Shown here in pieces: positions 1,020 through 61,190 of a stretch of 64,000 bases of DNA. The translations under genes and the position numbers were made by a program. Within the stretch, counting starts at the first letter, position 1; each line of letters starts with the position of its first letter. The notes beneath the pieces are model-generated. The model was not told where the DNA came from, ran no database searches, and was given only the letters and a program-made list of their open reading frames with translations. The stretch is taken from contig OZ251226.1 in the NCBI GenBank assembly GCA_965240325.2, positions 372,001 to 436,000 of the forward strand. The letters run 5' to 3'. This DNA comes from Rebecca billardiae RCC1528. Taxonomy: Eukaryota; Protista; Haptophyta.

Positions 1020-3192
1020 TGGCCCGCGGTGCAGGGCGGAGCGCGTAGCGTGGAGCCCCGCCGGGGGCCCTCACTACGTTGTCAAAAAGCAGATCTTTTG
1101 ATCAAAGAAAAGGGGACGGGGGACGATTTTGAGGGCTGTTGGAGGGTGAGTTTTCGCTTTTTCGAGGGGTACATTCGCCCATTGCTCTGCATTAGCAAGA
1201 CGCGATTGACGAAATAGCCGCGCCCGGGCCATTTCGCATATGTCGATGGACGGACGTGCATTTGTCAGTATATCTGGGTGAACGAATCTGCGATTTGTTG
1301 TAAATCTTCATAGCATATTGCCAAATAGGACGAGGACCCAGCGCGTGCGCTGGAGGTCCTGGGCTCCTGGCAAAAAGTCTTCGTCAAGTACTCAACTTTA
1401 CTAACGACGAACCTTTATTGCGCGCTGCCAAATTACTCAACTTTACACCTGAATGACCCCAGTGGGCGGAAATGGCCATATCTCCCGGAGATCGGGAGTA
1501 CTCACACGTGTGAGTCATGTTTCGTCCTTTTTTCCGAGACGTTGATTGGTCAAACGCTCAGCATTCTATGTCCACAATTCCATATCGACACAACACAACT
1601 CCTACCAACCTGTGTACTAAAAACCTTGGGTTAGCTGCACAACGACCAATCATTATCAGCGCGCAGCGAGCGGAGAGACTCGAAAACCGAGAATCACTCA
1701 CGCATTTACTATGATGTTTGCTCTTCGCCCATGCCAACTTTGCTATTGACAAAAACGCAGCGGCTTGGTTACGACCCATAGAAAGACGACCACCAATCAG
1801 CACACAGCAAACGAGACAACCTTCACTTTCGAGCGGGCGAAAGGAGCTTTGGCCTTCAACCCGCAGGCATATGCGTTCTGGCGCTGGCCTTCGTTCGGCG
1901 CCCGAGCATCATCGGTAGACGTGTGGCGTGCCGGCCCACGGTCCGCCGCCCTCGCCCTGCTCATCTTCATCGTCTCCTCATCCTCCTCGTCGTCCGCGCC
2001 GCCGCCGTGCGCCAGCGCCTCCGCCAGCGCGGCGCCGCGCAGGTGCTCGCGGAACAGCGCGACGGCGCCAGAGCGCGCCGGCCGGCGTGGCGCCGGCGGG
2101 CGGGCGCGCGGCGCTCAGCGCGGTGCCGAGCAGCCCGCCGAGCGCGCGCAGCTGCGCACCCGCCGGCAGCTCGAGCAGCGCCGCGTGGCACGCGCCCGCG
2201 CCGGCGGCGCCGAGCTCCGCGCACAGCACGGACAGCCCTCGTGCCCACGCCGCCGCGCGCCCGCCCGCGCCCGCGGCGTGCAGCGCGCCGAGCGCGGCGC
2301 CGAGCGCGGCGCGCGCTGCGGACGTGTCGGCGGCGCACAGCGCACCCGCCGCCGCGCCCAGTGCACACGCGGCACACGCGAGCAGCTTGAGCACGCTCGC
2401 GCATGCCAACTGCGAGTGCGGAGGCGCTGGGCGCCGAGCTGGCGAAGCGCGGCGCCGAGCTCGACGCGCTGCGCAACGCGGAGACGGACGCGCTGGGCGC
2501 GCGTGGCGCCCTCGTCGCGACGCCCCGTGCAGCAGCTCGAGCAGCCAGCTGTGGAGTAGACGGCCGTCGAGGCGATCGGCGCCGGGCGCCAGCGCGCACG
2601 GGCTCAGCCCGTGCCGCTGGCTCGGGCCGCCGCAGCCGTCTTCGAGGCCGACGCGGCGGAGGAGGCGGCGGGCGAGCACGGCGGCGCGGTGGAGCAGGCG
2701 CGCACGCGCGGCGGCAGGCGCGACGCGCCGCTCGCCTCGTTCCACCCCGAGCTCCGCTCGGTCTCGGTGCGCGGCTGCCGGCAGCGCAGGCCGGGGCAGC
2801 ACTGCGCGGCGCGCGCTCTCGCTCCGTCTGCCGGCACGAGGTGCGCCGGCTGAGTGAGCGACCAGCGGCCCGTCGTCGAGCGCATGGCGCCGCGCGAGCA
2901 CGTCAAGCAGACTGTGCGCCCGCACGCGCGCACGCGCTGGCCCGCGCCGCGCGGCGCCTATCGCCCTGCCTGCGCGCGCGCGCCGCCCCGCGGCGGCCGC
3001 TTCCCCGCGCGGCGGCCCGCCGGCGACAGTCCTCGGCCCGCCGGCCCGGTGGGCGGTAACTGAGTTGTGGCGGTGGCAGCTCCGAGGCAAACGAACTGTT
3101 ACACATGTCCGACTGAGACAGCAGCCGACGGAGGGTGCACCGCGGGCCCCTAACTGCGTTGGTTCTACGGAAGGACCGCGGAACGCGGTCAT
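1020..3192 (+). mobile_element. Non-autonomous Helitron2/Helentron-like element, copy 1
   Basis: Begins TGGCCCGCGGTGCA. The inverted copy TGCACCGCGGGCC lies at ~3136-3148, followed ~25 bp later by the hairpin GACCGCG-GAA-CGCGGTC and AT. Flanks are AT-rich. The same ends occur at 11041, 29674 and 40667-42242. Confidence 0.7.
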
Positions 3193-37987: not shown

Positions 37988-40600
37988 ATTACCAGGTGGC
38001 CGCACGCCCTGCCTGAACCGGCAGCCGCGCTTTAGGGAAACACCATCCGGGGGGCCGCCTTTCACTTAAGGACACGCGGGTGGGTGATTACTGAACACGT
38101 GAACCATGTCCTTTTCGGACATACGCACACGCAAGATCTTGGGTACGCAGTCATACTATCTGAATCCTGAGCGCCCACAAGCCCTCTTGGGTCCATGATA
38201 ATCTGCCTCGTCAGCGAGCGTCCAAAAGCGAATCCGACGGAAGGTTTTGATTGAAAGCGAGCGCTTTCTCCACTACGAGACGGATTCCATTCTGGTCCGC
38301 TCGTTCTGAACCAAAAGGGCATGGATGCCGTTCCACGGCGCGCGCGCGGTTGGGGCGGGCGGCGAAGCGGTTTGGTCGGTGGGGTACGGTACAGTCTGTG
38401 GCGGGCCGGCGGTGGGTGAGCTACCTATGCAGTTTAGTTGCGCACGCTCGCTCGACGGCAGACCGGCCATAATCATGCAAGTAGCAATAGCATCAAGCTG
38501 TATGTGTCCGCCACTCCGCCAAGTCAAGAAGTGCTAGTCCCTACTTAGTTACGCCGGCGGCCGGCGGGCACATATCATTCACTAGAGACGGCACCCTCGA
38601 CGCCACTATTGGCCTTCCGTACCCCGCCCGCCGCAAGCCCGCCGCACATCCGTATATGATCGTGAGCGTTTCAGACGACAAGTGGACTAGGGCAGCAGCT
38701 GGCAAAACGCACCGTCGTCGGCGTCGATGGCTCACACGATCGCGTACCCGGTGGTGGTCGGAGTGCCGGTTGGGTTCACCATGCCCAACGGTCTCCCTTC
38801 GGGCCAGTCGGCCCGCACGAATGCGCCGCGACCAGCGCCATTTGCCTCGCAACCATCGGCAGCATCGTTGCGCAACCGGGGCGGTCGCATTTGCCGGCGC
38901 AACATCTACCTGACCATCTCTGCAGTGCCCAACAACCATCCTCTCCTTTCCAACCTTCCTGCAGTGGCGACACACTTGCTGGCGCCATTGAGGGGCAAAC
39001 AGAAGGAGTTCGTAGTCAGACGACTCATTTAGTGCTGACATCAAGATAGATATAATAGATATAGACATTGACCCGCTCCTCAGGGAGTCCTCGGCTCCTC
39101 CGCGACGAGCATCAGTCCGACCTGCTCGCCGCCAGACTTATCTGCGCCGGCGTATATAGACTGAATGTCGCGATGAATGTCAGAATGAGCCGCCTCAATT
39201 ATAATATAACGGATACTATTGGGCTGCCGGCGCTGCGCCCGGCGCTGCCGCCAGTCGCGTGACGGCTCAAGCGAGACCGTGGCAGCAATTGGCGTAGCAG
39301 CGACGATCACGATGATGTCGATGATCGATGGCGATGCCGCCGCACTCGGTGGCATCCGCGATGACGGATGCAGTCTCAGGCACCTTCGCAGGATGCGCAG
39401 CAGCGCTCAACCTCGCAACCGGATGATCACGTACAGGAAGCCGTCCGGATGGCTCGACGCCGACGCGAGCCAGTCGATGGGCGCGTCGATCGGCGCGGGC
39501 ACACCCTGGACGAGCACCTCGCTGACGTGCGGGCCTGGCACCGCTGCCGATGGGCCATCGGCTCGCGCCGTGCTGTCGCATGCTTCCGCCGCGGTCGCAG
39601 CTGCGGTAGACATTCGAGTGAGCAGCAGCGCGCAGTGCGCTTGGCTCGGCTTGGCAGCTCGGCGAGCGTCAATCCGTCTGAATTCACGGCCGATTCAGTG
39701 CGCCGCTGCATGGCCGTACCGTGGCTCGCAACGACGGTATCGTCTTCGACGACATGGATTTCACGCACATGACGGCCAAGGCCGTGATCAAGATGCTCGA
39801 CCCCAACTACGAGCGATCGGTGCACACGCGCTACACGAATGCCAAGATCCCCGCAGACATGCCACGCGTGTTCACGACAAATCTGGCCATGCAGTACCCC
39901 TACGAGCACATCTTCCCGCCCGGTCGCAACCTCGAGCAGCAGCGTGCGCTCAACCGCCGCTTCAAAGTCGTGACGGTCGATGCCGACCTCTTTGCGGCGG
40001 CTCCCGCCGCCGGCGCGTCAGCGGCTGCCGTGCAGACGTGAGCCATCAGCAAGCGTGCGTCGGTGCATAGCCGCAAGATGCCCTGCTCAGCCCTGCTGAG
40101 CTGCTCAGACTGGCTTGACCCTCACGCTAGTGCCAGGCGGCCTGGCGGTGAGGCGCCGCGGCAGCGGGCCGCCCTTTCGTCAGCCCTCTCTCGAGCGGCT
40201 TGCGGCGAGGGCGAGAACAGCGGTGAAACTGAAACATGGGTGTCCTCGGGCCAATCAGGTTAGCGCAAACAGACCGCGCAGCCTGAATGCGTTGAGAGGA
40301 GCTAGTACACCGACCCTGAATAGCCCTATGGGCGAACTCGTTTTGCGGATGTGGAGGCCCCCAAGATTCCGCCGATGATTCGGCACGATTAGGGAAGCAT
40401 GCAAGCGTCCAACCGGTACAACATAAGAAGCCGCTGAGAAGTATAGGCTCAAAAATGACCATAAGCCCCAATCGCGGGGCGTACGGTTGCGTGTGTTCGA
40501 CAACTTGACCCTGAAATCAATTGGAGACCGGGTAGAGCGGTCCAAGGCGCGGCCGGCGTCAGACCGCCGACTCACGCATATGACTTCTCCACCTGGTAAT
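37988..40600. mobile_element. 2.6-kb unit bounded by a 12-bp inverted repeat, carrying a decayed CRESS-type Rep
   Basis: ATTACCAGGTGG (37988-37999) and CCACCTGGTAAT (40589-40600). Both flanks are (GA)TATA-type microsatellite. Confidence 0.6.
38727..40041 (+). pseudogene. rep: Degenerate CRESS-DNA-virus-like Rep (HUH nickase plus SF3 helicase)
   Basis: The 5' part has motif I-like 'RRNIYLTIS' then 'KEFVV'. The 3' part (39721-40041) has Walker B 'GIVFDDM', 'RSVHTRYTNAKIP', motif C 'RVFTTN' and Arg finger 'ALNRRF'. The middle is disrupted; HUH and Walker A are not recognisable. Confidence 0.75.
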
Positions 40601-55233: not shown

Positions 55234-56058
55234 TGTCGAAGGCGTTGAAGTAAGCCCGAAACGACTGAGCTAAATCGGTTCGCGCGAACCGATTTAGCTC
55301 AGTCGTTTCGGGCTCTTCAACGCCTTCGACATAACCGTAAGTCTCCTGTGGGACACCCCGCGAGGGGCTGTAGTCCCGTCCAGTGTTCTGACGGATTTGT
55401 TGTCGAGGTTTTTCTCTCCCCGCCTGGTCTCTCCCAGGTGTTCCACCCTGCGTGCTCGTCTGCTCTGCTCTGGCTTCGTAGAGACTCCGTCTTTTGTGGG
55501 CGGTGAGCCCTTCTTGCTGCTCTGGCTTTGTGAGGCTCTTTCTGTAGTCTTTGTTGTTGACCCGGGCGACTGTACCCGGAGGTTGCGCGTCGCGGACCGT
55601 GCTCGTTTTTCTGTCGTCTTTCTTTGTCGGTCATCCTCTTCGTGCTCCCCTCTTTCGTTCTATCGTCTTTTTGCCGACTCCTCGCTTTTCATTCCCCCCC
55701 GGAGCCGCGAGGCTCTCGCGAGGTCGAAAGCGCTTCGCGTGAAAGGCCAAGAGTTGCCCGCGTCGGTCGGTCGCTGGATTCGAACAGGTGACTTTACGGT
55801 TGTGTCGAAGGCGTTGAAGAGCCCGAAACGACTGAGCTAAATCGGTTCGCGGGACCCTGCGAGAGACCAGGCGGGGAGAGAAAAACCTCGACAACAAATC
55901 CGTCAGAACACTGGACGGGACTACAGCCCCTCGCGGGGTGTCCCACAGGAGACTTACGGTTATGTCGAAGGCGTTGAAGAGCCCGAAACGACTGAGCTAA
56001 ATCGGTTCGCGCGAACCGATTTAGCTCAGTCGTTTCGGGCTCTTCAACGCCTTCGACA
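55234..56058. mobile_element. 825-bp element with ~200-bp TIRs each ending in a ~96-bp palindrome, inserted in (TA)n
   Basis: Palindromes at 55234-55331 and 55963-56058. Inverted arms at 55332-55433 and 55861-55962. A fifth copy of the 48-bp half-site lies at 55803-55850. Termini are TGT...ACA. Confidence 0.9.
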
Positions 56059-56174: not shown

Positions 56175-59100
56175 TAGTCACCTCAAAGATGTGCGGGTGC
56201 CGTTTCTGGACGCTTCTAGCCTTGATCTCCTGAACATTTGTAGGGGAGATGAGTTTAGTCAGTCGACTGACTAAACTTTTTCTTCAATCAAGGCTCCTCA
56301 CGACTAGGCGCCGTCTTGCACGAAATCCCTATCCTCTCGTCTGGCCACGGCCCTTGGTCTGGCGGTCTTGCATCAAATCCTGGACTCGCGAGGGCAAGGG
56401 GTGGGCCCTCTACCTACGGCCGCCAAACCGGTAATACGCGTTCTGAGCCCGGTCTGGTTGCGGGCGGCCCGGGGCCGCCGCGCCCCGGCTGCCGGGGCGG
56501 CGACTCGGGGAGGCGAGCGTTGGCGCGCGCCCGCCGTGGCCGCGGCGGCAGCGGGGTCGTTGGGCCATCCCAGGGGTATCTGAGCCTCTCGACAAGGGGC
56601 CGTGGCTGCGCCTCGCGTGGGCTGTACTGCACGCGGGCAGCCGACACGAATGCGATGCGCCATCCAAGCGCGAGCCCGAGAGCTTTCGCGACACGGGTGC
56701 TGCGCGAGCACGTCTGAAGGAGCGGGCAAGGTCTCGAGAGGAAGCAGGGAGACCACAGAAGTGCTAGCTCGCAACGACAGTCAGGGAGCGCGAGCCGCCC
56801 CGCTGCGCTGCCTGAGCCGGTCGCCCCACGGGCACGGCCACGGGCCACGCGTGGCGGGCAAACGTGACTGCCGCGCGGCAAGGCTTGGTGAGTGTGTACA
56901 TGCTTCAAGTGGCTGGTCGCTGGTAGAGCTGCTGCATCCCAATCGCGAGCAGCCAGTAACAGCGACTCGGCCGCGCCGCCGCGGCCGTGCTCCGCAGTTC
57001 TGGTGCCCGCGCGGAACTGACGGTCACGGTTGCGCACCCGCGGGCGGCGAGACCAGTCAGTGGGCCGGCTCTGCCGCCGTCCCTGAGCGTGACCCGCAGT
57101 GGCGTCGCCGGGCTTGCAGGGGGGTCTAAGCCGGCCGCCCGCCCGAACCGGAGCCTGGCACGACCGTATCCGGCCCGCGCCGCCGCGCGCTGCCACAGTG
57201 GCCGGTGGCGGTGGCACGCGTCGGGCCCGCGCAGCCCGCGCGGCCCGCGCCGCCGCGCGGCCCGCGAGCGCGGGCCTCATCCGACGAATAAGACTGACGA
57301 GTATCACGAACGAATATGGCGCCAATGCGGGATAGTGCGACTGGAGTGCTGAGCCGTGACTGACTACGTCATGCCTACCAGCCGTACGTACATCCCCGCC
57401 CACTATTCGGATGGTAGCCCGCGGTCGGCGGCGGCGAGCCGCCGATGATTGTCCCGCCGGTCGCTGTGACATCCTTCCACTTACGCCAGGTGAAGCGCAG
57501 GCCGATGACCGACTGGAAGTCGGTGAACAGGACGAGCTGGTGCGGGCTCTCGGCGAGCGTCGTGGCGGGAGAGAAGATCTCGGCGTAGTTGTCCGACGCG
57601 TTGCCGTTCAGCGGAGCGATCGAGAAGAAGGGCCAGCCGGGGGCGAGTGGCAAGCTCGCGTGAGATGCGAGCTCGAGCTCGTACCGGCCGCGCAGCCAGC
57701 GGCCCAGGCGGTCCTCGGCGAAGAGGTCGATGACGGCAGCATCGTACGCGGTGGCATCGACCTGGACCGATGCGCGCTCGGCTGCGTGCAAGCCTCGGCA
57801 GTGCGCGACGACGCGCGTGAGCAGCCGATCGAAGATCGCCGCCTGCTGCTGCTGGCGGACGCGAATGTGCATCGGCTCCCGCCACAGGAACTCACGGTAC
57901 CGCGCGACGAGGTTGTGCACAGCCTCCGCCGGCGGGCGGTACAGCTTCGCGCCGTGCTCGATGGCGACGATGGTGACGTGGCGATACACCTTACTGCTGG
58001 CGAGGCAGCCCGCGACACGGCGCTCGGACTCGACGCACGCCGCAACCAGATCGGCGTCCGCGGCGATGCCAATCTCATCGCGCCCTGCGCGGCGCGCGCG
58101 GGCACGCGCGCAGGACGCGCGTCAACACGGGCGGCGGGGGGGAGCGGGCACGGCGCCCGCGCAGCGGGATCCGATCGTACCGAGATCGAGCACGTGCTCG
58201 TCCGCCTCCCCGAGCAAGCACGGCCGCAGCGGGTAGCCGCGCTGCTGCCCGTCCTCCGCAGCCCCTGTCGTCGTCGGCAGCACGATGCCGCCGTCCGGCT
58301 GCTTCCAGGCCTTCAGGCCGACACCGAACTCGAATGGCATGCGGGCGGTCGGGAGCTGCGCGATGACCTCCTCGGGTGGCTCGGTCAGATTCATGTTCGC
58401 CACATGCAGCACGTTGCGCTTGGCCTTGAACGGCTGCGGCTCGGACTCGCCCTGCCTGGCATCACAGACGACGGGGCGGACGACGACACGCGGTGTTGGC
58501 GCGCCGCGGGTATGCGCGCGCAGGGAGGGATCGCGGGCGGGGCGGCGCACCTCGGGCGCTTGAACGCGGTCCATGCATTCACGAAGAAGTCCAGTGCGCC
58601 CCCGCGCGCGATGAACTCCGCAAGGTTCTTCCACACCATCACCTTGCCATGCACCGTCTCGACCTCGATCTCCTCCTCCTTCCAGTTGCCGACGTGCTCG
58701 TAGACCTCCGCAGGGTGGTAGTCTGCGGTGCGCGTCTTGCCAGGCAAGTCCTCCACGAAGTAGAACCACTTTACCATGAGGGTCACTGACCCCGCGACGA
58801 CTTCTTGACGACGCGGCGCACCTGCGCGAGCCCGGCGCGCTCCGAAGGCCTGCCGTTCTTCTGCAGCCACTGCACGACGACATGGTCTCCGATTCCGATA
58901 TTGATGCCGCGCCAGATGACGCCGACATTCCGCAATCGTCCTCCCCGCGTGGCGGCGGTGACGAGCTCCGGCGCGGTGGCCGGCGGGAGCTCCCCGCTCC
59001 GTCCATGACTTCGACAAACCGCGAGGGGCCGTTCGACCGGCGCTCAGCCGGAACGGAGCGACTCAACCAGGCTCGGCGGTTGCTCAAAAACCTATTCATG

Positions 59101-59219
59101 CCCTCCACCGCCCCTGGTGCAGGCCGGGCGTTGATTGGCCGTCGGTTGCTAGTGCAGTTTTAAGAAAATCTCGTGGAACGTGGCCGGAAAAGGCACCCGC
59201 ACATCTTTGAGGTGGACTA
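56175..59219. mobile_element. 3.0-kb TIR element with TAG...CTA termini carrying a BAH-domain gene
   Basis: Left end TAGTC-ACCTCAAAGATGTGCGGGTGCCGTTTCTGG; right end (reverse complement) TAGTCCACCTCAAAGATGTGCGGGTGCCTTTTCCGG. Flanks are CAC | CAA. Confidence 0.8.
57375..58777 (-). CDS. BAH-domain-like protein; exons 58551-58777, 58181-58455, 57375-58084
   Basis: 'VKWFYFVEDLP...YHPAEVYE...EEIEVETVHGKVMV' fits the BAH pattern WFY.P/E...P.ELF...DEI.V.SI.GKC.V. GT-AG introns 58456-58550 and 58085-58180 join three ORF pieces with no stop. The true start may lie upstream. Confidence 0.65.
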
Positions 59220-59261: not shown

Positions 59262-61040
59262 TCATACTCGTCGCCGCCATCGTCTGTGGCCTCCGATCTT
59301 CCAAGGGGCTGCTTGCAGCTGCAGCCCACTCGCCTGCTTCAACTTGGCCTTGCTGCCTGCGTTGAAGTGCCTGCCCCACAGGCACGCGTCGTCGTCGCCA
59401 CGCACGCGCACCGTCGACGCGGCCAGCTTGAGCGCCGCCGCCAGCCGCTCGCGCAGCACTTGGACGTTGGTGTACAGCTCCGCCCTCGTGGCAGGGCGGC
59501 CCACGCGCTGGCCATGGCGCACGGCGGTCGGGTGCCGCGGGTCGACCCAGCCGTGCGCGAGAAGGTCGGCACCCGAGATGAAGTGCGCCGTCGTGTGCGC
59601 GCGCCACGCGCAGCCGCGAGCGCTCGGCCGCTGGCCGGGCGCGCACTGCGCCGCCTTGGGGTGCGAGTACCAGTGGCCGACCACGCGATCGGTCGCGTTG
59701 GCGAGGGGGACGAACTCCTGCAGGAACTCGATGCCCTTCCTCGCCGCGCGAGTGGCCGCGTCCGCCCCGGCGTCCGGCGCCAGCCGCGTCTTCCGAATGA
59801 CCGGCGGCGGGTCCACCACCTCCATCCGGCCGACCGCGCGTCGCGCCGCCCGCTCGTCGCCGTCGCAGCCGCACGTGTACAGAGGGAAGTCTCGCGGGTA
59901 CGTGCGGTCGCACCGCGCGGTGTCGCGGCGCGCGATCACGCGGTCTGTGGCGAGCGCGCACTCGCACGCGCCGCGCCAGCACTCCGGCTTGCTCTCGTCG
60001 ATCAGGTTGTACTTGAGCGGGTCCTTCTTCCGCCGCGTCGCTCGCAGCCACTTGAAGCAGCGCGAGTTGCAAGAGAGGTACTCGCCATACTGAGGCACCA
60101 CGCCGGCCGCGCGCCATTGCACGCAGCGGTGTGAGATGGTGGCGAGCGAGGCGTTGGGGAAGGGCGCGCGGCGCGGCGAGCTCAGCGGCGGGTCGGGCCG
60201 CTTGTCGAGGCTGAGGATGTACCGCGAGTTGGTCAGCAGCCACGCGACGCCGCCCACGTCTGCCGTGTTGGCGTCGGCCAGCTGGTCGGGGCCCTCGCAG
60301 CCGCCGTTCGGGCAGAAGTCAGTGACGCGCAGCACGCCGGTCGCGACCACGCCGTGCGGCAGCGTGCGGAAGTGCTCGACGGGCGACCACGGCCACGTCC
60401 GCCCGCGCGGGGGCGCGTCGTGCGCGCGCACGCGCACGGCGTACTGCGTCGCGGGCCTCAGGGCCTGCAGCAGCAGCCGTTGGTTGAGGTGCGGCGGCGT
60501 CGGAAACCCGATCTGGTGCTGCAGCGCCGCGCGCGGCGGCGGGTCGCGCACGGGGACGATCTCGGGGCCGTCGTCGGCGCCGGAGTGGTTCGACTGCCAC
60601 CACTCCACCGTGTACACCGTGTGGCCCCGTGAGCCTGGCGTCGGCAGCCGCCAGCTCAGGTCGAGCGTGGTCGAGGTGGGCGCCGCGTGCAGCTGCACGA
60701 GCCCCACCTGCCCGGGCGCGAGCGGCTCCGTCCGGCACGAGCAGCAGCGCTCGCGGCGCGACCACACGTCGTCCTTGTCCAGCGTGCGCGTCCAGAGCTG
60801 GTACGTCGTCTCCGGCACCAGCCGCGAGACGTGCAGCGCGGCCGCGTCGCGCTTGTGAAACGTGAGGGCGAGCTGAGGCTGGCAGCCCGCGTCGCCGGCG
60901 CAGAGCTGCAGCTCCGTGGCCAGCCCGGAGGGGCTGCCGAGAGTGACCGAGAGCGCGCTCGGGCCCGCCGCGACGCAGCTCCCGCCGGCGCGGACCGACC
61001 CCACGGCGCACGCCGAGAGCAAGAGCGCGCGGATCAGCAT
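59262..61040 (-). CDS. Secreted FN3-domain, Cys-rich protein (copy A)
   Basis: Signal 'MLIRALLLSACAVGSVRA'. FN3 motifs 'VSRLVPETTYQLW', 'LDLSW' and 'LQALRPATQYAVRVRA'. Cys-rich C-terminal half. Confidence 0.75.
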   Translation of the reverse strand: MLIRALLLSACAVGSVRAGGSCVAAGPSALSVTLGSPSGLATELQLCAGDAGCQPQLALTFHKRDAAALHVSRLVPETTYQLWTRTLDKDDVWSRRERCCSCRTEPLAPGQVGLVQLHAAPTSTTLDLSWRLPTPGSRGHTVYTVEWWQSNHSGADDGPEIVPVRDPPPRAALQHQIGFPTPPHLNQRLLLQALRPATQYAVRVRAHDAPPRGRTWPWSPVEHFRTLPHGVVATGVLRVTDFCPNGGCEGPDQLADANTADVGGVAWLLTNSRYILSLDKRPDPPLSSPRRAPFPNASLATISHRCVQWRAAGVVPQYGEYLSCNSRCFKWLRATRRKKDPLKYNLIDESKPECWRGACECALATDRVIARRDTARCDRTYPRDFPLYTCGCDGDERAARRAVGRMEVVDPPPVIRKTRLAPDAGADAATRAARKGIEFLQEFVPLANATDRVVGHWYSHPKAAQCAPGQRPSARGCAWRAHTTAHFISGADLLAHGWVDPRHPTAVRHGQRVGRPATRAELYTNVQVLRERLAAALKLAASTVRVRGDDDACLWGRHFNAGSKAKLKQASGLQLQAAPWKIGGHRRWRRRV

Positions 61041-61190
61041 GCCGATCTGGTCCTTGATCAGGTTCCGCCTTTGATTGGTGATGCACTTTGTCGGCGTGCA
61101 GGCCCTCTCGCTGCGCACCTGCGACGGCCGCCCCGTCGCCATGTCGTACAGCGTTGTGCTCACCATCACCTATTTACCTCGCTCGTCGCG

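What the first reader, a model, noticed from the sequence alone, without database searches (positions are those of the whole stretch)
56175..59219. TIR transposon whose only visible cargo is an intact spliced BAH-domain gene
Seen: ~35-bp TIRs starting TAG, near-TSD CAC/CAA, a three-exon ORF with a BAH-like N-terminus and a ~330-aa unknown C-terminal region, and no transposase. Known: TAG...CTA ends with 3-4-bp TSDs are typical of Academ elements; BAH domains read nucleosomes and repressive histone marks; some transposons encode anti-silencing factors (e.g. VANC of plant Mutator-like elements). Inference: a transposon-borne chromatin reader used for targeting or anti-silencing, possibly acting through the subterminal palindrome at 56252.
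Basis: partly seen in the sequence, partly recalled or inferred. Interest (0 to 1): 0.8.

Follow-up and report, generated by a model that had tools for sequence, protein, structure and literature searches.

The report
Duplication-free algal transposon, damaged BAH-like gene
This is one of 19 near-identical copies of a young 3-kb jumping element in a very GC-rich alga that inserts without the usual short duplication of host DNA; its only gene, damaged at its front end here, encodes a probable chromatin-reader (BAH-like) module joined to a conserved domain of unknown fold, and no known transposase is present.

Summary
The element is real, but its ends and gene differ from the finding. True ends are window 56179 (CACCTCAAAG...) and 59214 (...CTTTGAGGTG), 3,036 bp, with 31-nt TIRs. 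TAG/CTA and CAC/CAA are flank of this copy only. The 72-Mb genome holds 19 copies, most at least 99.9% identical. The TIR occurs nowhere else. Insertion makes no target-site duplication: 15 of 19 copies show none, and two empty paralogous sites match an occupied one base for base. Academ is therefore not supported.

The minus-strand gene has canonical GT-AG introns and exists only inside this family, plus a decayed piece in a second duplication-free family with CCACC ends. An older copy (L018) has one continuous first exon with ATG. All young copies, this one included, lack 40 bp holding that ATG and carry a 2-bp frameshift inside the BAH-like domain, leaving a 403-codon ORF that starts mid-domain.

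BAH is probable but unproven: Pfam is silent, while protein-language-model neighbours and a profile match to host BAH domains agree. The C-terminal domain has 10 relatives among 1.84 billion proteins and a confident model with no fold match.

Most likely a trans-mobilised derivative of an unclassified family. The scan found this family before on other copies (s1-363250, s1-367777, s1-365466, s1-360811).

The parts
56179..56209 (+). Left terminal inverted repeat (CACCTCAAAGATGTGCGGGTGCCGTTTCTGG); true left end of the element
   Evidence: the repeat finder I3. Copy alignment shows similarity begins at 56179. The 23-mer occurs only at the ends of the 19 copies.
56252..56277 (.). Perfect 26-bp subterminal palindrome (13+13, no loop), left end only
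   Evidence: Invariant in all copies. DNA fold of 56179-56300 has z -3.1. Function untested.
56278..57374 (.). GC-rich non-coding stretch downstream of the gene
   Evidence: No Pfam hit on its long ORFs. Against the older copy L018 it has 3.1% substitutions and many indels that are not multiples of 3.
57375..58084 (-). Last exon (235 codons plus stop at 57377-57375): conserved orphan domain
   Evidence: Open frame. 10 relatives at 31-40% identity. AF2 model pLDDT 82, pTM 0.81 with no fold match.
58085..58180 (-). Intron 2, 96 nt, GT-AG, phase 1
   Evidence: Read. Relatives P0003 and P0012 carry the exon-3 and exon-4 equivalents in one ORF.
58181..58455 (-). Middle exon (about 91 codons)
   Evidence: Open frame. 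BLASTP to P0012 E 3e-10 and to P0003 E 1e-5.
58458..58550 (-). Intron 1, 93 nt, GT-AG, phase 2
   Evidence: Read. The phases fit the flanking frames.
58551..58777 (-). First exon of the surviving 403-codon ORF (ATG 58777-58775): C-terminal half of the BAH-like domain (MVKWFYFVEDL...)
   Evidence: Aligns in register with host BAH domains.
58793..58794 (-). 2-bp insertion (CG) relative to the older copy L018: frameshift inside the BAH-like domain, shared by all young copies
58795..58992 (-). N-terminal half of the BAH-like domain in another frame, with no start codon. A 40-bp segment holding the ATG in L018 is missing at 58993.
59184..59214 (-). Right terminal inverted repeat; true right end of the element

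Best explanation
Window 56179-59214 is one copy of a very young, 19-copy family of TIR-bounded DNA elements with CACC...GGTG ends. The host is a GC-rich alga that earlier notes call a pavlovophyte haptophyte.

Shown here:
- The family is mobile and integrates precisely between two adjacent target bases, with no duplication and no deletion. That implies a blunt or unstaggered target break, or a recombinase-type joining, rather than the staggered cut of classical DDE cut-and-paste elements.
- Its single minus-strand gene belongs to the family and is not a captured host gene.
- In the ancestral state (copy L018) the gene encoded a divergent BAH-like domain of about 150 aa, then about 330 aa of a conserved domain with no known fold.
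- The master of the recent burst had lost the start codon through a 40-bp deletion and gained a 2-bp frameshift inside the BAH-like domain.
- This copy and its sisters therefore carry a front-damaged gene with a 403-codon ORF starting mid-domain.

Inferred:
- The copies are moved in trans by an enzyme not identified here.
- The full-length protein used its BAH-like module to bind nucleosomes, for targeting or for protection from silencing.
For: Mobility and boundaries:
- 19 copies in different flanks. Subfamily A copies differ by 0-2 substitutions in 3,036 bp.
- The TIR 23-mer with up to 3 mismatches is found only at the copy ends.

No duplication:
- Exact-repeat test over 19 copies.
- The occupied site L014 and the empty sites L049:418|419 and L048 are identical over 40 nt on each side (39 of 40 on the right of L048), and the element lies exactly between them.
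- A third, more diverged empty site is in L031.

Gene model:
- GT-AG introns of 93 and 96 nt in consistent phases.
- Relatives P0003 and P0012 span the exon 3-4 junction in one ORF.

The gene belongs to the family:
- Exon 4 and exon 2 match only inside these copies.
- A decayed piece, 50% aa identity with stops, lies in a second duplication-free family with CCACCACGACG ends and at least 14 near-identical copies.

Damage:
- L018 has one continuous first exon with an ATG. All the others share the 40-bp loss and the 2-bp insertion.
- Subfamily B also has an 8-bp insertion in exon 4 and still sits at three or four sites.

BAH-like domain:
- 25 of 30 nearest ESM Atlas clusters carry PF01426, score 0.94, 206 of 256 features shared.
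- BLASTP to two host BAH domains gives E 0.010 and 0.023 in the same register.
- hhalign to a host BAH alignment gives E 0.0047 over 77 columns.
Against: - Pfam reports no BAH hit, even on the continuous L018 exon. hhalign probability is only 7.5%. The single-sequence AF2 model of that exon was unusable, pLDDT 34. The BAH fold is therefore not demonstrated.
- No trans-acting enzyme or longer partner element was found.
- A one-gene element between TIRs is the classic layout of an autonomous transposon. The 403-codon ORF could therefore still be the active protein.
- The young copies are too alike to show selection, and dN/dS against L018 is 0.62, not significant.
- The organism's identity rests on earlier unchecked notes.
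Confidence: 0.6

Rival explanations
1. The BAH-like/orphan-domain protein is itself the transposase of a new, non-DDE, duplication-free superfamily. Either the full-length form or the surviving 403-aa form cuts at the CACC...GGTG ends and joins them to an unstaggered target break.
For: - The ancestral-type copy is about 3.1 kb, with TIRs and exactly one gene. That is the standard layout of an autonomous DNA transposon.
- Relics of the same gene lie in a second duplication-free family with similar CACC ends.
- There is no free host copy and no longer partner.
- The domain is conserved, with invariant charged residues and a basic GLRFxRRKWxD motif.
- The 403-codon ORF is open in the 13 full-length subfamily A copies.
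Against: - No resemblance to any nuclease, recombinase or transposase by Pfam, PDB sequence or fold search. Best Foldseek E is 0.29 and best VIA Z is 2.8.
- No copy in the assembly encodes the full-length protein, yet two families with different TIRs burst very recently.
- Subfamily B spread with a frameshifted last exon.
- Only 10 relatives were found among 1.84 billion proteins, unlike known transposase superfamilies.
Confidence: 0.22
2. One reading: a non-autonomous Academ-type element that captured an intact host chromatin reader and uses it for targeting or anti-silencing, possibly through the subterminal palindrome.
For: - No transposase inside.
- A BAH-like domain is probable.
- The palindrome is real and conserved.
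Against: - The ends are CACC...GGTG, not TAG...CTA.
- There is no 3-4 bp duplication.
- No longer element shares the TIRs.
- No host parent gene exists in the genome.
- The BAH-like domain is frameshifted and lacks a start codon in this copy.
- There is no significant purifying selection.
Confidence: 0.05
3. Not a transposon: the copies arose by segmental duplication or assembly artefact, and the inverted ends are incidental.
For: One pair, L014 and L016, is 100% identical for at least 6.4 kb including flank. The break lies at the left end of the element, which looks like recombination or a misjoin.
Against: - The other copies have unrelated flanks on both sides. Similarity stops at the same two bases in every copy.
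- A clean empty site exists.
Confidence: 0.01

Closest known systems
Spy elements (PIF/Harbinger-ISL2EU-Spy, PHIS superfamily; PMC4122938, PMC4482050)
   Same: Eukaryotic TIR-bounded DNA elements that insert precisely without a target-site duplication.
   Different: Spy encodes a PIF-like DDE transposase and inserts between AAA and TTT. No DDE domain is detectable here and no target motif was seen.
CACTA/EnSpm-Mirage-Chapaev and Transib elements (CAC... termini)
   Same: TIRs that begin with CAC.
   Different: Those make duplications of 2-5 bp and encode recognisable DDE transposases. Here the duplication is 0 bp and no such protein is present. The resemblance is from my own knowledge of those families and was not tested beyond the duplication and Pfam.
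Academ
   Same: The absence of a recognisable classical transposase in this copy is compatible with a non-autonomous derivative.
   Different: No longer partner shares the TIRs.
Helitrons and Replitrons (HUH Rep elements; PMC10288648)
   Same: No regular target-site duplication, and a subterminal palindrome.
   Different: Those lack TIRs. Replitrons have short direct terminal repeats. They also encode Rep. Here there are 31-nt TIRs and no Rep.
Transposon-borne chromatin readers (chromodomain integrases, PHD or chromo fusions to transposases; bioRxiv 10.1101/2021.11.30.470311) and VANC-type anti-silencing factors
   Same: A mobile element encoding a probable histone/nucleosome-reader module.
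   Different: That survey reports chromo and PHD domains as the ones often found with TE domains, and does not link BAH to TEs in the passages read.

Membership tests
Academ DNA transposons | 3-4 bp target-site duplication | tested here: not met
   15 of 19 copies have no flanking direct repeat. The empty and occupied sites show 0 bp.
   The common ends of 19 copies are CACCTC...GAGGTG. TAGT/GACTA is flank of this copy only.
Academ DNA transposons | Academ transposase in the element or in a longer partner with the same TIRs | tested here: not met
   No Pfam hit in any ORF. The TIR occurs only at the 19 copies of about 3 kb. The genome was not searched with an Academ transposase profile, because none was at hand.
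BAH domain (Pfam PF01426) | Match to the family profile above the curated cut-off | tested here: not met
   No hit at E up to 10 on the single exons or on the continuous L018 exon. The genome scan with PF01426 found three host loci, none in the element.
BAH domain (PF01426) | Remote similarity across the domain core (GD.V.V ... V.V.WFY..ED ... E.F.S ... V) | tested here: inconclusive
   ESM Atlas: 25 of 30 nearest clusters carry BAH, score 0.94. BLASTP to host BAH domains: E 0.010 and 0.023. hhalign: E 0.0047 over 77 columns, but probability 7.5%.
BAH domain (PF01426) | BAH beta-barrel fold | tested here: inconclusive
   The single-sequence AF2 model had pLDDT 34 and was unusable. No relatives were found to build an alignment.
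Spy / PHIS superfamily | PIF-like DDE transposase and AAA|TTT target | tested here: not met
   No DDE domain. The flanks show no AAA|TTT. The absence of a duplication is shared.
Helitron / Replitron (HUH Rep) | Rep (HUH) gene, and no TIRs or direct terminal repeats | tested here: not met
   31-nt TIRs are present. No Rep is present. Replitron features are taken from PMC10288648.
Gene-capturing (Pack-type) element | A parent host gene outside the element | tested here: not met
   Six-frame searches of the whole genome with exon 2 and exon 4 hit only element copies and TE-borne relics. Other species could not be checked.
RNase H-like DDE transposase, tyrosine or serine recombinase | Catalytic fold in the encoded protein | tested here: not met
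   The confident model of the last exon (pLDDT 82) has no significant match in PDB or BFVD. Residues 1-55 of the model and exon 3 were barely tested or not tested.

The most novel reading that the evidence does not exclude
The BAH-like/orphan-domain protein is the founding member of a new class of eukaryotic transposase with a previously unseen catalytic fold. It would define a duplication-free TIR superfamily, so far seen only in this algal lineage, that couples nucleosome reading to unstaggered integration.
Probability: 0.2. Interest if true: 0.9.

Novelty: new variant of a known kind. Interest (0 to 1): 0.55.

Why it matters
[quoted passage not shown] This family is recently active, TIR-bounded and duplication-free. 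It has no recognisable transposase. Its own gene joins a probable chromatin reader to a conserved domain with no known fold. It points either to an undescribed mobilising enzyme in haptophyte algae or to a new kind of transposase. The copies are near-identical and the genome is small, so de novo insertions should be observable in culture and the question is experimentally tractable. For genome annotation, the 403-codon ORF would be called as a host orphan gene 19 times over unless it is masked.

Tried and rejected
Protein searches:
- Pfam on each exon and on the other long ORFs of the element found nothing. The only weak row is Terminase_6C, E 0.011, judged spurious.
- PDB sequence searches with the single exons and with the family profile found nothing real. 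The polyubiquitin rows come from a 25-residue stretch repeated nine times.
- Word-index searches found no relatives for exon 4 or the BAH exon. The alignment search returned only two known members.
- The ESM Atlas gave no usable hit for exon 4.
- AF2 on the BAH exon alone gave pLDDT 34, so no fold search was made with it.

Context of the relatives:
- It found nothing in metagenome contigs with a 5-row alignment or with P0003.
- The genomic context of the 10 relatives is therefore unknown.

Fetching DNA:
- The possible older relative on C5 and the full extent of the L014/L016 duplication were therefore not read. I did not try to read them by other means.

Ideas considered and dropped:
- A link to the Rep-only element at 37988-40600. 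Its GGTGG lies at the inner end of the repeat, not the outer end.
- Replitron or Helitron membership.
- One-ended or rolling-circle transduction to explain L014/L016. The identity runs on beyond the host repeat, so recombination, duplication or a misjoin explains it better.
- A homopolymer sequencing error as the cause of the frameshift. The difference from L018 is a CG dinucleotide, not a run length.
- A His-Me finger motif in the orphan domain. The histidine is not conserved.

Step left out:
All searches were exon by exon, by reference.
Full report
**1. Observation**

The finding's inverted repeat is real. The arms 56179-56209 and 59184-59214 are 31 nt long and 94% complementary.

A DNA search of the window's own assembly (72 Mb, 41 contigs) with 56175-59219 found 19 copies on many contigs, most at 98-100% identity. 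Their similarity to the window runs from query base 4-5 to base 3040-3041. Aligning the ends of all copies shows that every copy starts with CACCTCAAAGATG and ends with CATCTTTGAGGTG, and that the flanks are unrelated.

The element is therefore 56179-59214, 3,036 bp. The TAG...CTA ends and the CAC/CAA "near-TSD" of the finding are flank of this copy only.

The 23-nt TIR core, allowing 3 mismatches, occurs 37 times in the genome, always at the ends of these copies. No miniature derivatives and no longer partner share it.

**2. Family structure**

- The 13 full-length copies of subfamily A (the window copy included) differ from one another by 0-2 substitutions. L019 belongs to it too but has a 147-bp deletion in the first coding exon (58627-58773).
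- The window copy has two private changes. 57648 is synonymous and 58157 is intronic.
- Subfamily B (L014-L017) shares an 18-bp deletion, a 3-bp insertion and an 8-bp insertion inside the last exon.
- L018 is an older copy, 94% identical.

**3. No target-site duplication**

Fifteen of 19 copies have no direct repeat at all across the element. The exact matches of 2-4 bp in the other four are what GC-rich DNA gives by chance.

The subfamily B copy L014 lies inside another repeat family with more than 40 copies. Two empty members, L049 at 418|419 and L048, match L014's flanks over 40 nt on the left and 40 (39 in L048) on the right. The 3,029-bp element sits exactly between two adjacent bases, CCCC|GGTG, with no duplication and no deletion. 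A more diverged empty paralogue for L012 gives the same picture.

This rules out the 3-4 bp duplication on which the Academ suggestion rested.

**4. The gene**

The gene lies on the minus strand:

| Part | Coordinates | Notes |
|---|---|---|
| Start codon | 58777-58775 | ATG of the surviving ORF |
| First coding exon | to 58551 | C-terminal half of the BAH-like domain |
| Intron 1 | 58550-58458 | 93 nt, GT-AG, phase 2 |
| Middle exon | 58455-58181 | about 91 codons |
| Intron 2 | 58180-58085 | 96 nt, GT-AG, phase 1 |
| Last exon | 58084-57378 | conserved orphan domain |
| Stop codon | 57377-57375 | |

The ORF has 403 codons by arithmetic on these coordinates.

Every search was made exon by exon, by reference.

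The splice model has outside support. Two distant relatives, P0003 and P0012, align to exon 3 (E 1e-5 and 3e-10) and to exon 4 within one uninterrupted ORF.

**5. The front of the gene is damaged**

Upstream of the ATG, in another frame (58992-58795), lies a stretch that reads like the first half of a BAH domain (...GINIGIGDHVVVQW...AGLAQVRRVVKKSS). It has no start codon and runs into a TGA at 58785-58783.

In the older copy L018 the two halves are in one frame and are preceded by an ATG (MVRLISDYPELPP...). The exon is continuous from L018:1747 to its donor site.

Relative to L018, every other copy lacks 40 bp at 58993, the segment that holds the ATG. Every other copy also has two extra bases (CG, 58793-58794) that shift the frame within the domain. 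The difference is a dinucleotide and not a homopolymer length, so a systematic base-calling error is unlikely.

L018 itself has a TAG stop in the last exon and an 8-bp insertion near its end. No copy in the assembly therefore encodes the full-length protein.

The "intact BAH-domain gene" of the finding is in fact a 403-codon ORF that starts mid-domain.

**6. Is it a BAH domain?**

Against:
- Pfam finds nothing, even on the continuous L018 exon.
- A genome scan with PF01426 finds three host loci and none in the element.
- A single-sequence AF2 model was unusable, pLDDT 34.

For:
- 25 of the 30 nearest ESM Atlas clusters carry PF01426, with score 0.94 and 206 of 256 features shared.
- BLASTP of the L018 exon against two host BAH domains aligns the same hallmark strand (V.V.WFY..ED) at E 0.010 and E 0.023.
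- hhalign against the host BAH alignment covers 77 columns, from GD.V.V to the last strand, at E 0.0047. Its probability is only 7.5%.

I rate a divergent BAH-like fold at about 0.7. It is not demonstrated.

**7. The rest of the protein**

Exon 4 has no Pfam, PDB-sequence or word-index relatives. A full HMMER pass over 1.84 billion cluster representatives found 10 relatives at 31-40% identity. All are unnamed apart from one labelled "hypothetical protein". All come from JGI, ENA or Logan assemblies, on contigs of 1.2-2.5 kb.

The relatives share the motifs GW.FF, YAEIV.P.TS, LFTDF...GLRF.RRKW.DV and GP.PP..GY.P.

With this 13-row alignment AF2 gave a confident model, pLDDT 82.2 and pTM 0.81. 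It matches nothing:

| Search | Best result |
|---|---|
| Foldseek against PDB | E 0.29 |
| VIA-align against 48,161 representatives | Z 2.8 |
| Second look at Foldseek's list (pdb_via) | Z 2.2 |
| BFVD | E 0.30 |

Residues 1-55 of the model and exon 3 were hardly tested or not tested. I therefore say only that no known catalytic or binding fold was found, and not that the fold is new.

**8. Where the gene lives**

Six-frame searches of the genome with exon 2 and exon 4 hit only the 19 copies, one fragment, and a decayed piece inside a second repeat family. That piece covers exon 4 residues 34-162 at 50% identity, with four stops.

The second family is 2,427 bp long. It has at least 14 near-identical copies, TIRs of CCACCACGACGATTCCC, and again no duplication in the three copies read.

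Two duplication-free families with CACC ends thus carry remains of the same gene, and there is no free host copy. This argues that the gene belongs to this kind of element and was not captured.

**9. How it most likely works**

Shown:
- Recent mobility.
- Sharp ends.
- Precise, duplication-free integration.

Inferred:
- The integration step uses an unstaggered target break or a recombinase-type exchange.
- The young copies are moved in trans. All of them share the front-end damage, and subfamily B spread despite a frameshifted last exon.
- The enzyme was not found.

The alternative is that the 403-aa product, or the ancestral full-length protein, is itself a transposase of a new kind. The one-gene-between-TIRs layout and the relic in the second family favour it. 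The lack of any catalytic resemblance, the absence of an intact copy and the rarity of the family count against it. I give it about 0.2.

dN/dS between the young lineage and L018 is 0.62 (8 synonymous and 15 non-synonymous differences, p 0.19), so selection is not demonstrated.

The 26-bp palindrome at 56252-56277 is perfect and invariant, but nothing tests its role.

**10. Comparison with known systems**

- Spy elements share TIRs and the lack of a duplication, but they have a PIF-like DDE transposase and an AAA|TTT target.
- CACTA, Transib and Chapaev elements share CAC termini but make duplications of 2-5 bp.
- Helitrons and Replitrons lack TIRs and encode Rep.
- Academ fails on the ends and on the duplication.
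- A survey of chromatin domains in transposons reports chromo and PHD as the reader domains often found with TE domains. It does not link BAH to TEs in the passages read. I found no paper describing a BAH-bearing DNA transposon.

**11. Earlier work in this scan**

Four other windows of the same genome hold other copies of this family: s1-363250, s1-367777, s1-365466 and s1-360811. The three follow-up reports reached the same main conclusions: about 19 copies, no duplication, a BAH-like gene and a domain of unknown fold, with no transposase. Two of them also report front-end damage or a disabled gene. I read them only after my own tests, so they agree with my reading and are not support for it.

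The haptophyte or pavlovophyte identity of the genome comes from earlier notes. I did not check it.

**12. Limits**

- Both metagenome scans found nothing.
- As a result, the genomic context of the 10 relatives and a possible older relative on contig C5 remain unread.

Noticed in passing
L036:3945-6371 (G000:C1:192944-195370) and at least 13 further copies: A second duplication-free family: 2,427 bp, TIRs CCACCACGACGATTCCC/GGGAATCGTCGTGGTGG, copies 99.7-100% identical. It has no open gene. It holds a decayed 430-bp piece of the orphan-domain exon (74% nt, 50% aa, four stops). Something is moving it now.
   Followed up: partly
L046-L049 (G000:C34:359164-359594 and more than 40 other places): An unrelated repeat family with at least 40 copies at 83-100% identity hosts the L014 copy. 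Its empty members gave the clean empty site.
   Followed up: partly
L014/L046 (G000:C34:355065-361094) and L016/L047 (G000:C29:1145169-1151198): Two loci are 100% identical for at least 6.4 kb, covering the element, the host repeat and sequence beyond it. They diverge exactly at the left end of the element, whose first base is T in L016. This is ectopic recombination or duplication between copies, or an assembly misjoin at the repeat.
   Followed up: partly
G000:C5:1274278-1276467: An inverted, outward-facing pair of exact 13-mers (CCTCGAAGATGTG) lies 2.2 kb apart and resembles the TIR core. It may be an older relative without a detectable orphan-domain gene.
   Followed up: no
window 59262-61169 (minus strand): A 635-codon open frame ends 48 bp from the right end of the element, so this copy sits just downstream of what may be a host gene. 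It was not examined.
   Followed up: no
window 55794-56058: Just left of the element lie 48-55 nt perfect or near-perfect inverted repeats next to a (TA)n run. They are the end of the 825-bp palindromic-ended element already noted by the scan (s1-350607).
   Followed up: no
L042 (G000:C16:1461856-1462314), L043/L045 (C10:2696851-2697321), L044 (C12:798770-799114): Only three loci in the genome match the Pfam BAH profile. These are the host's canonical BAH genes, and they were used here as the comparison set.
   Followed up: partly
L040 (G000:C31:403456-404216): An isolated fragment of a family-1-like element covers exon 3 and the first 144 codons of exon 4. Part of it is 98% identical at the DNA level, the exon-4 part only about 65% at the protein level, and there are two TGA stops.
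   Followed up: no
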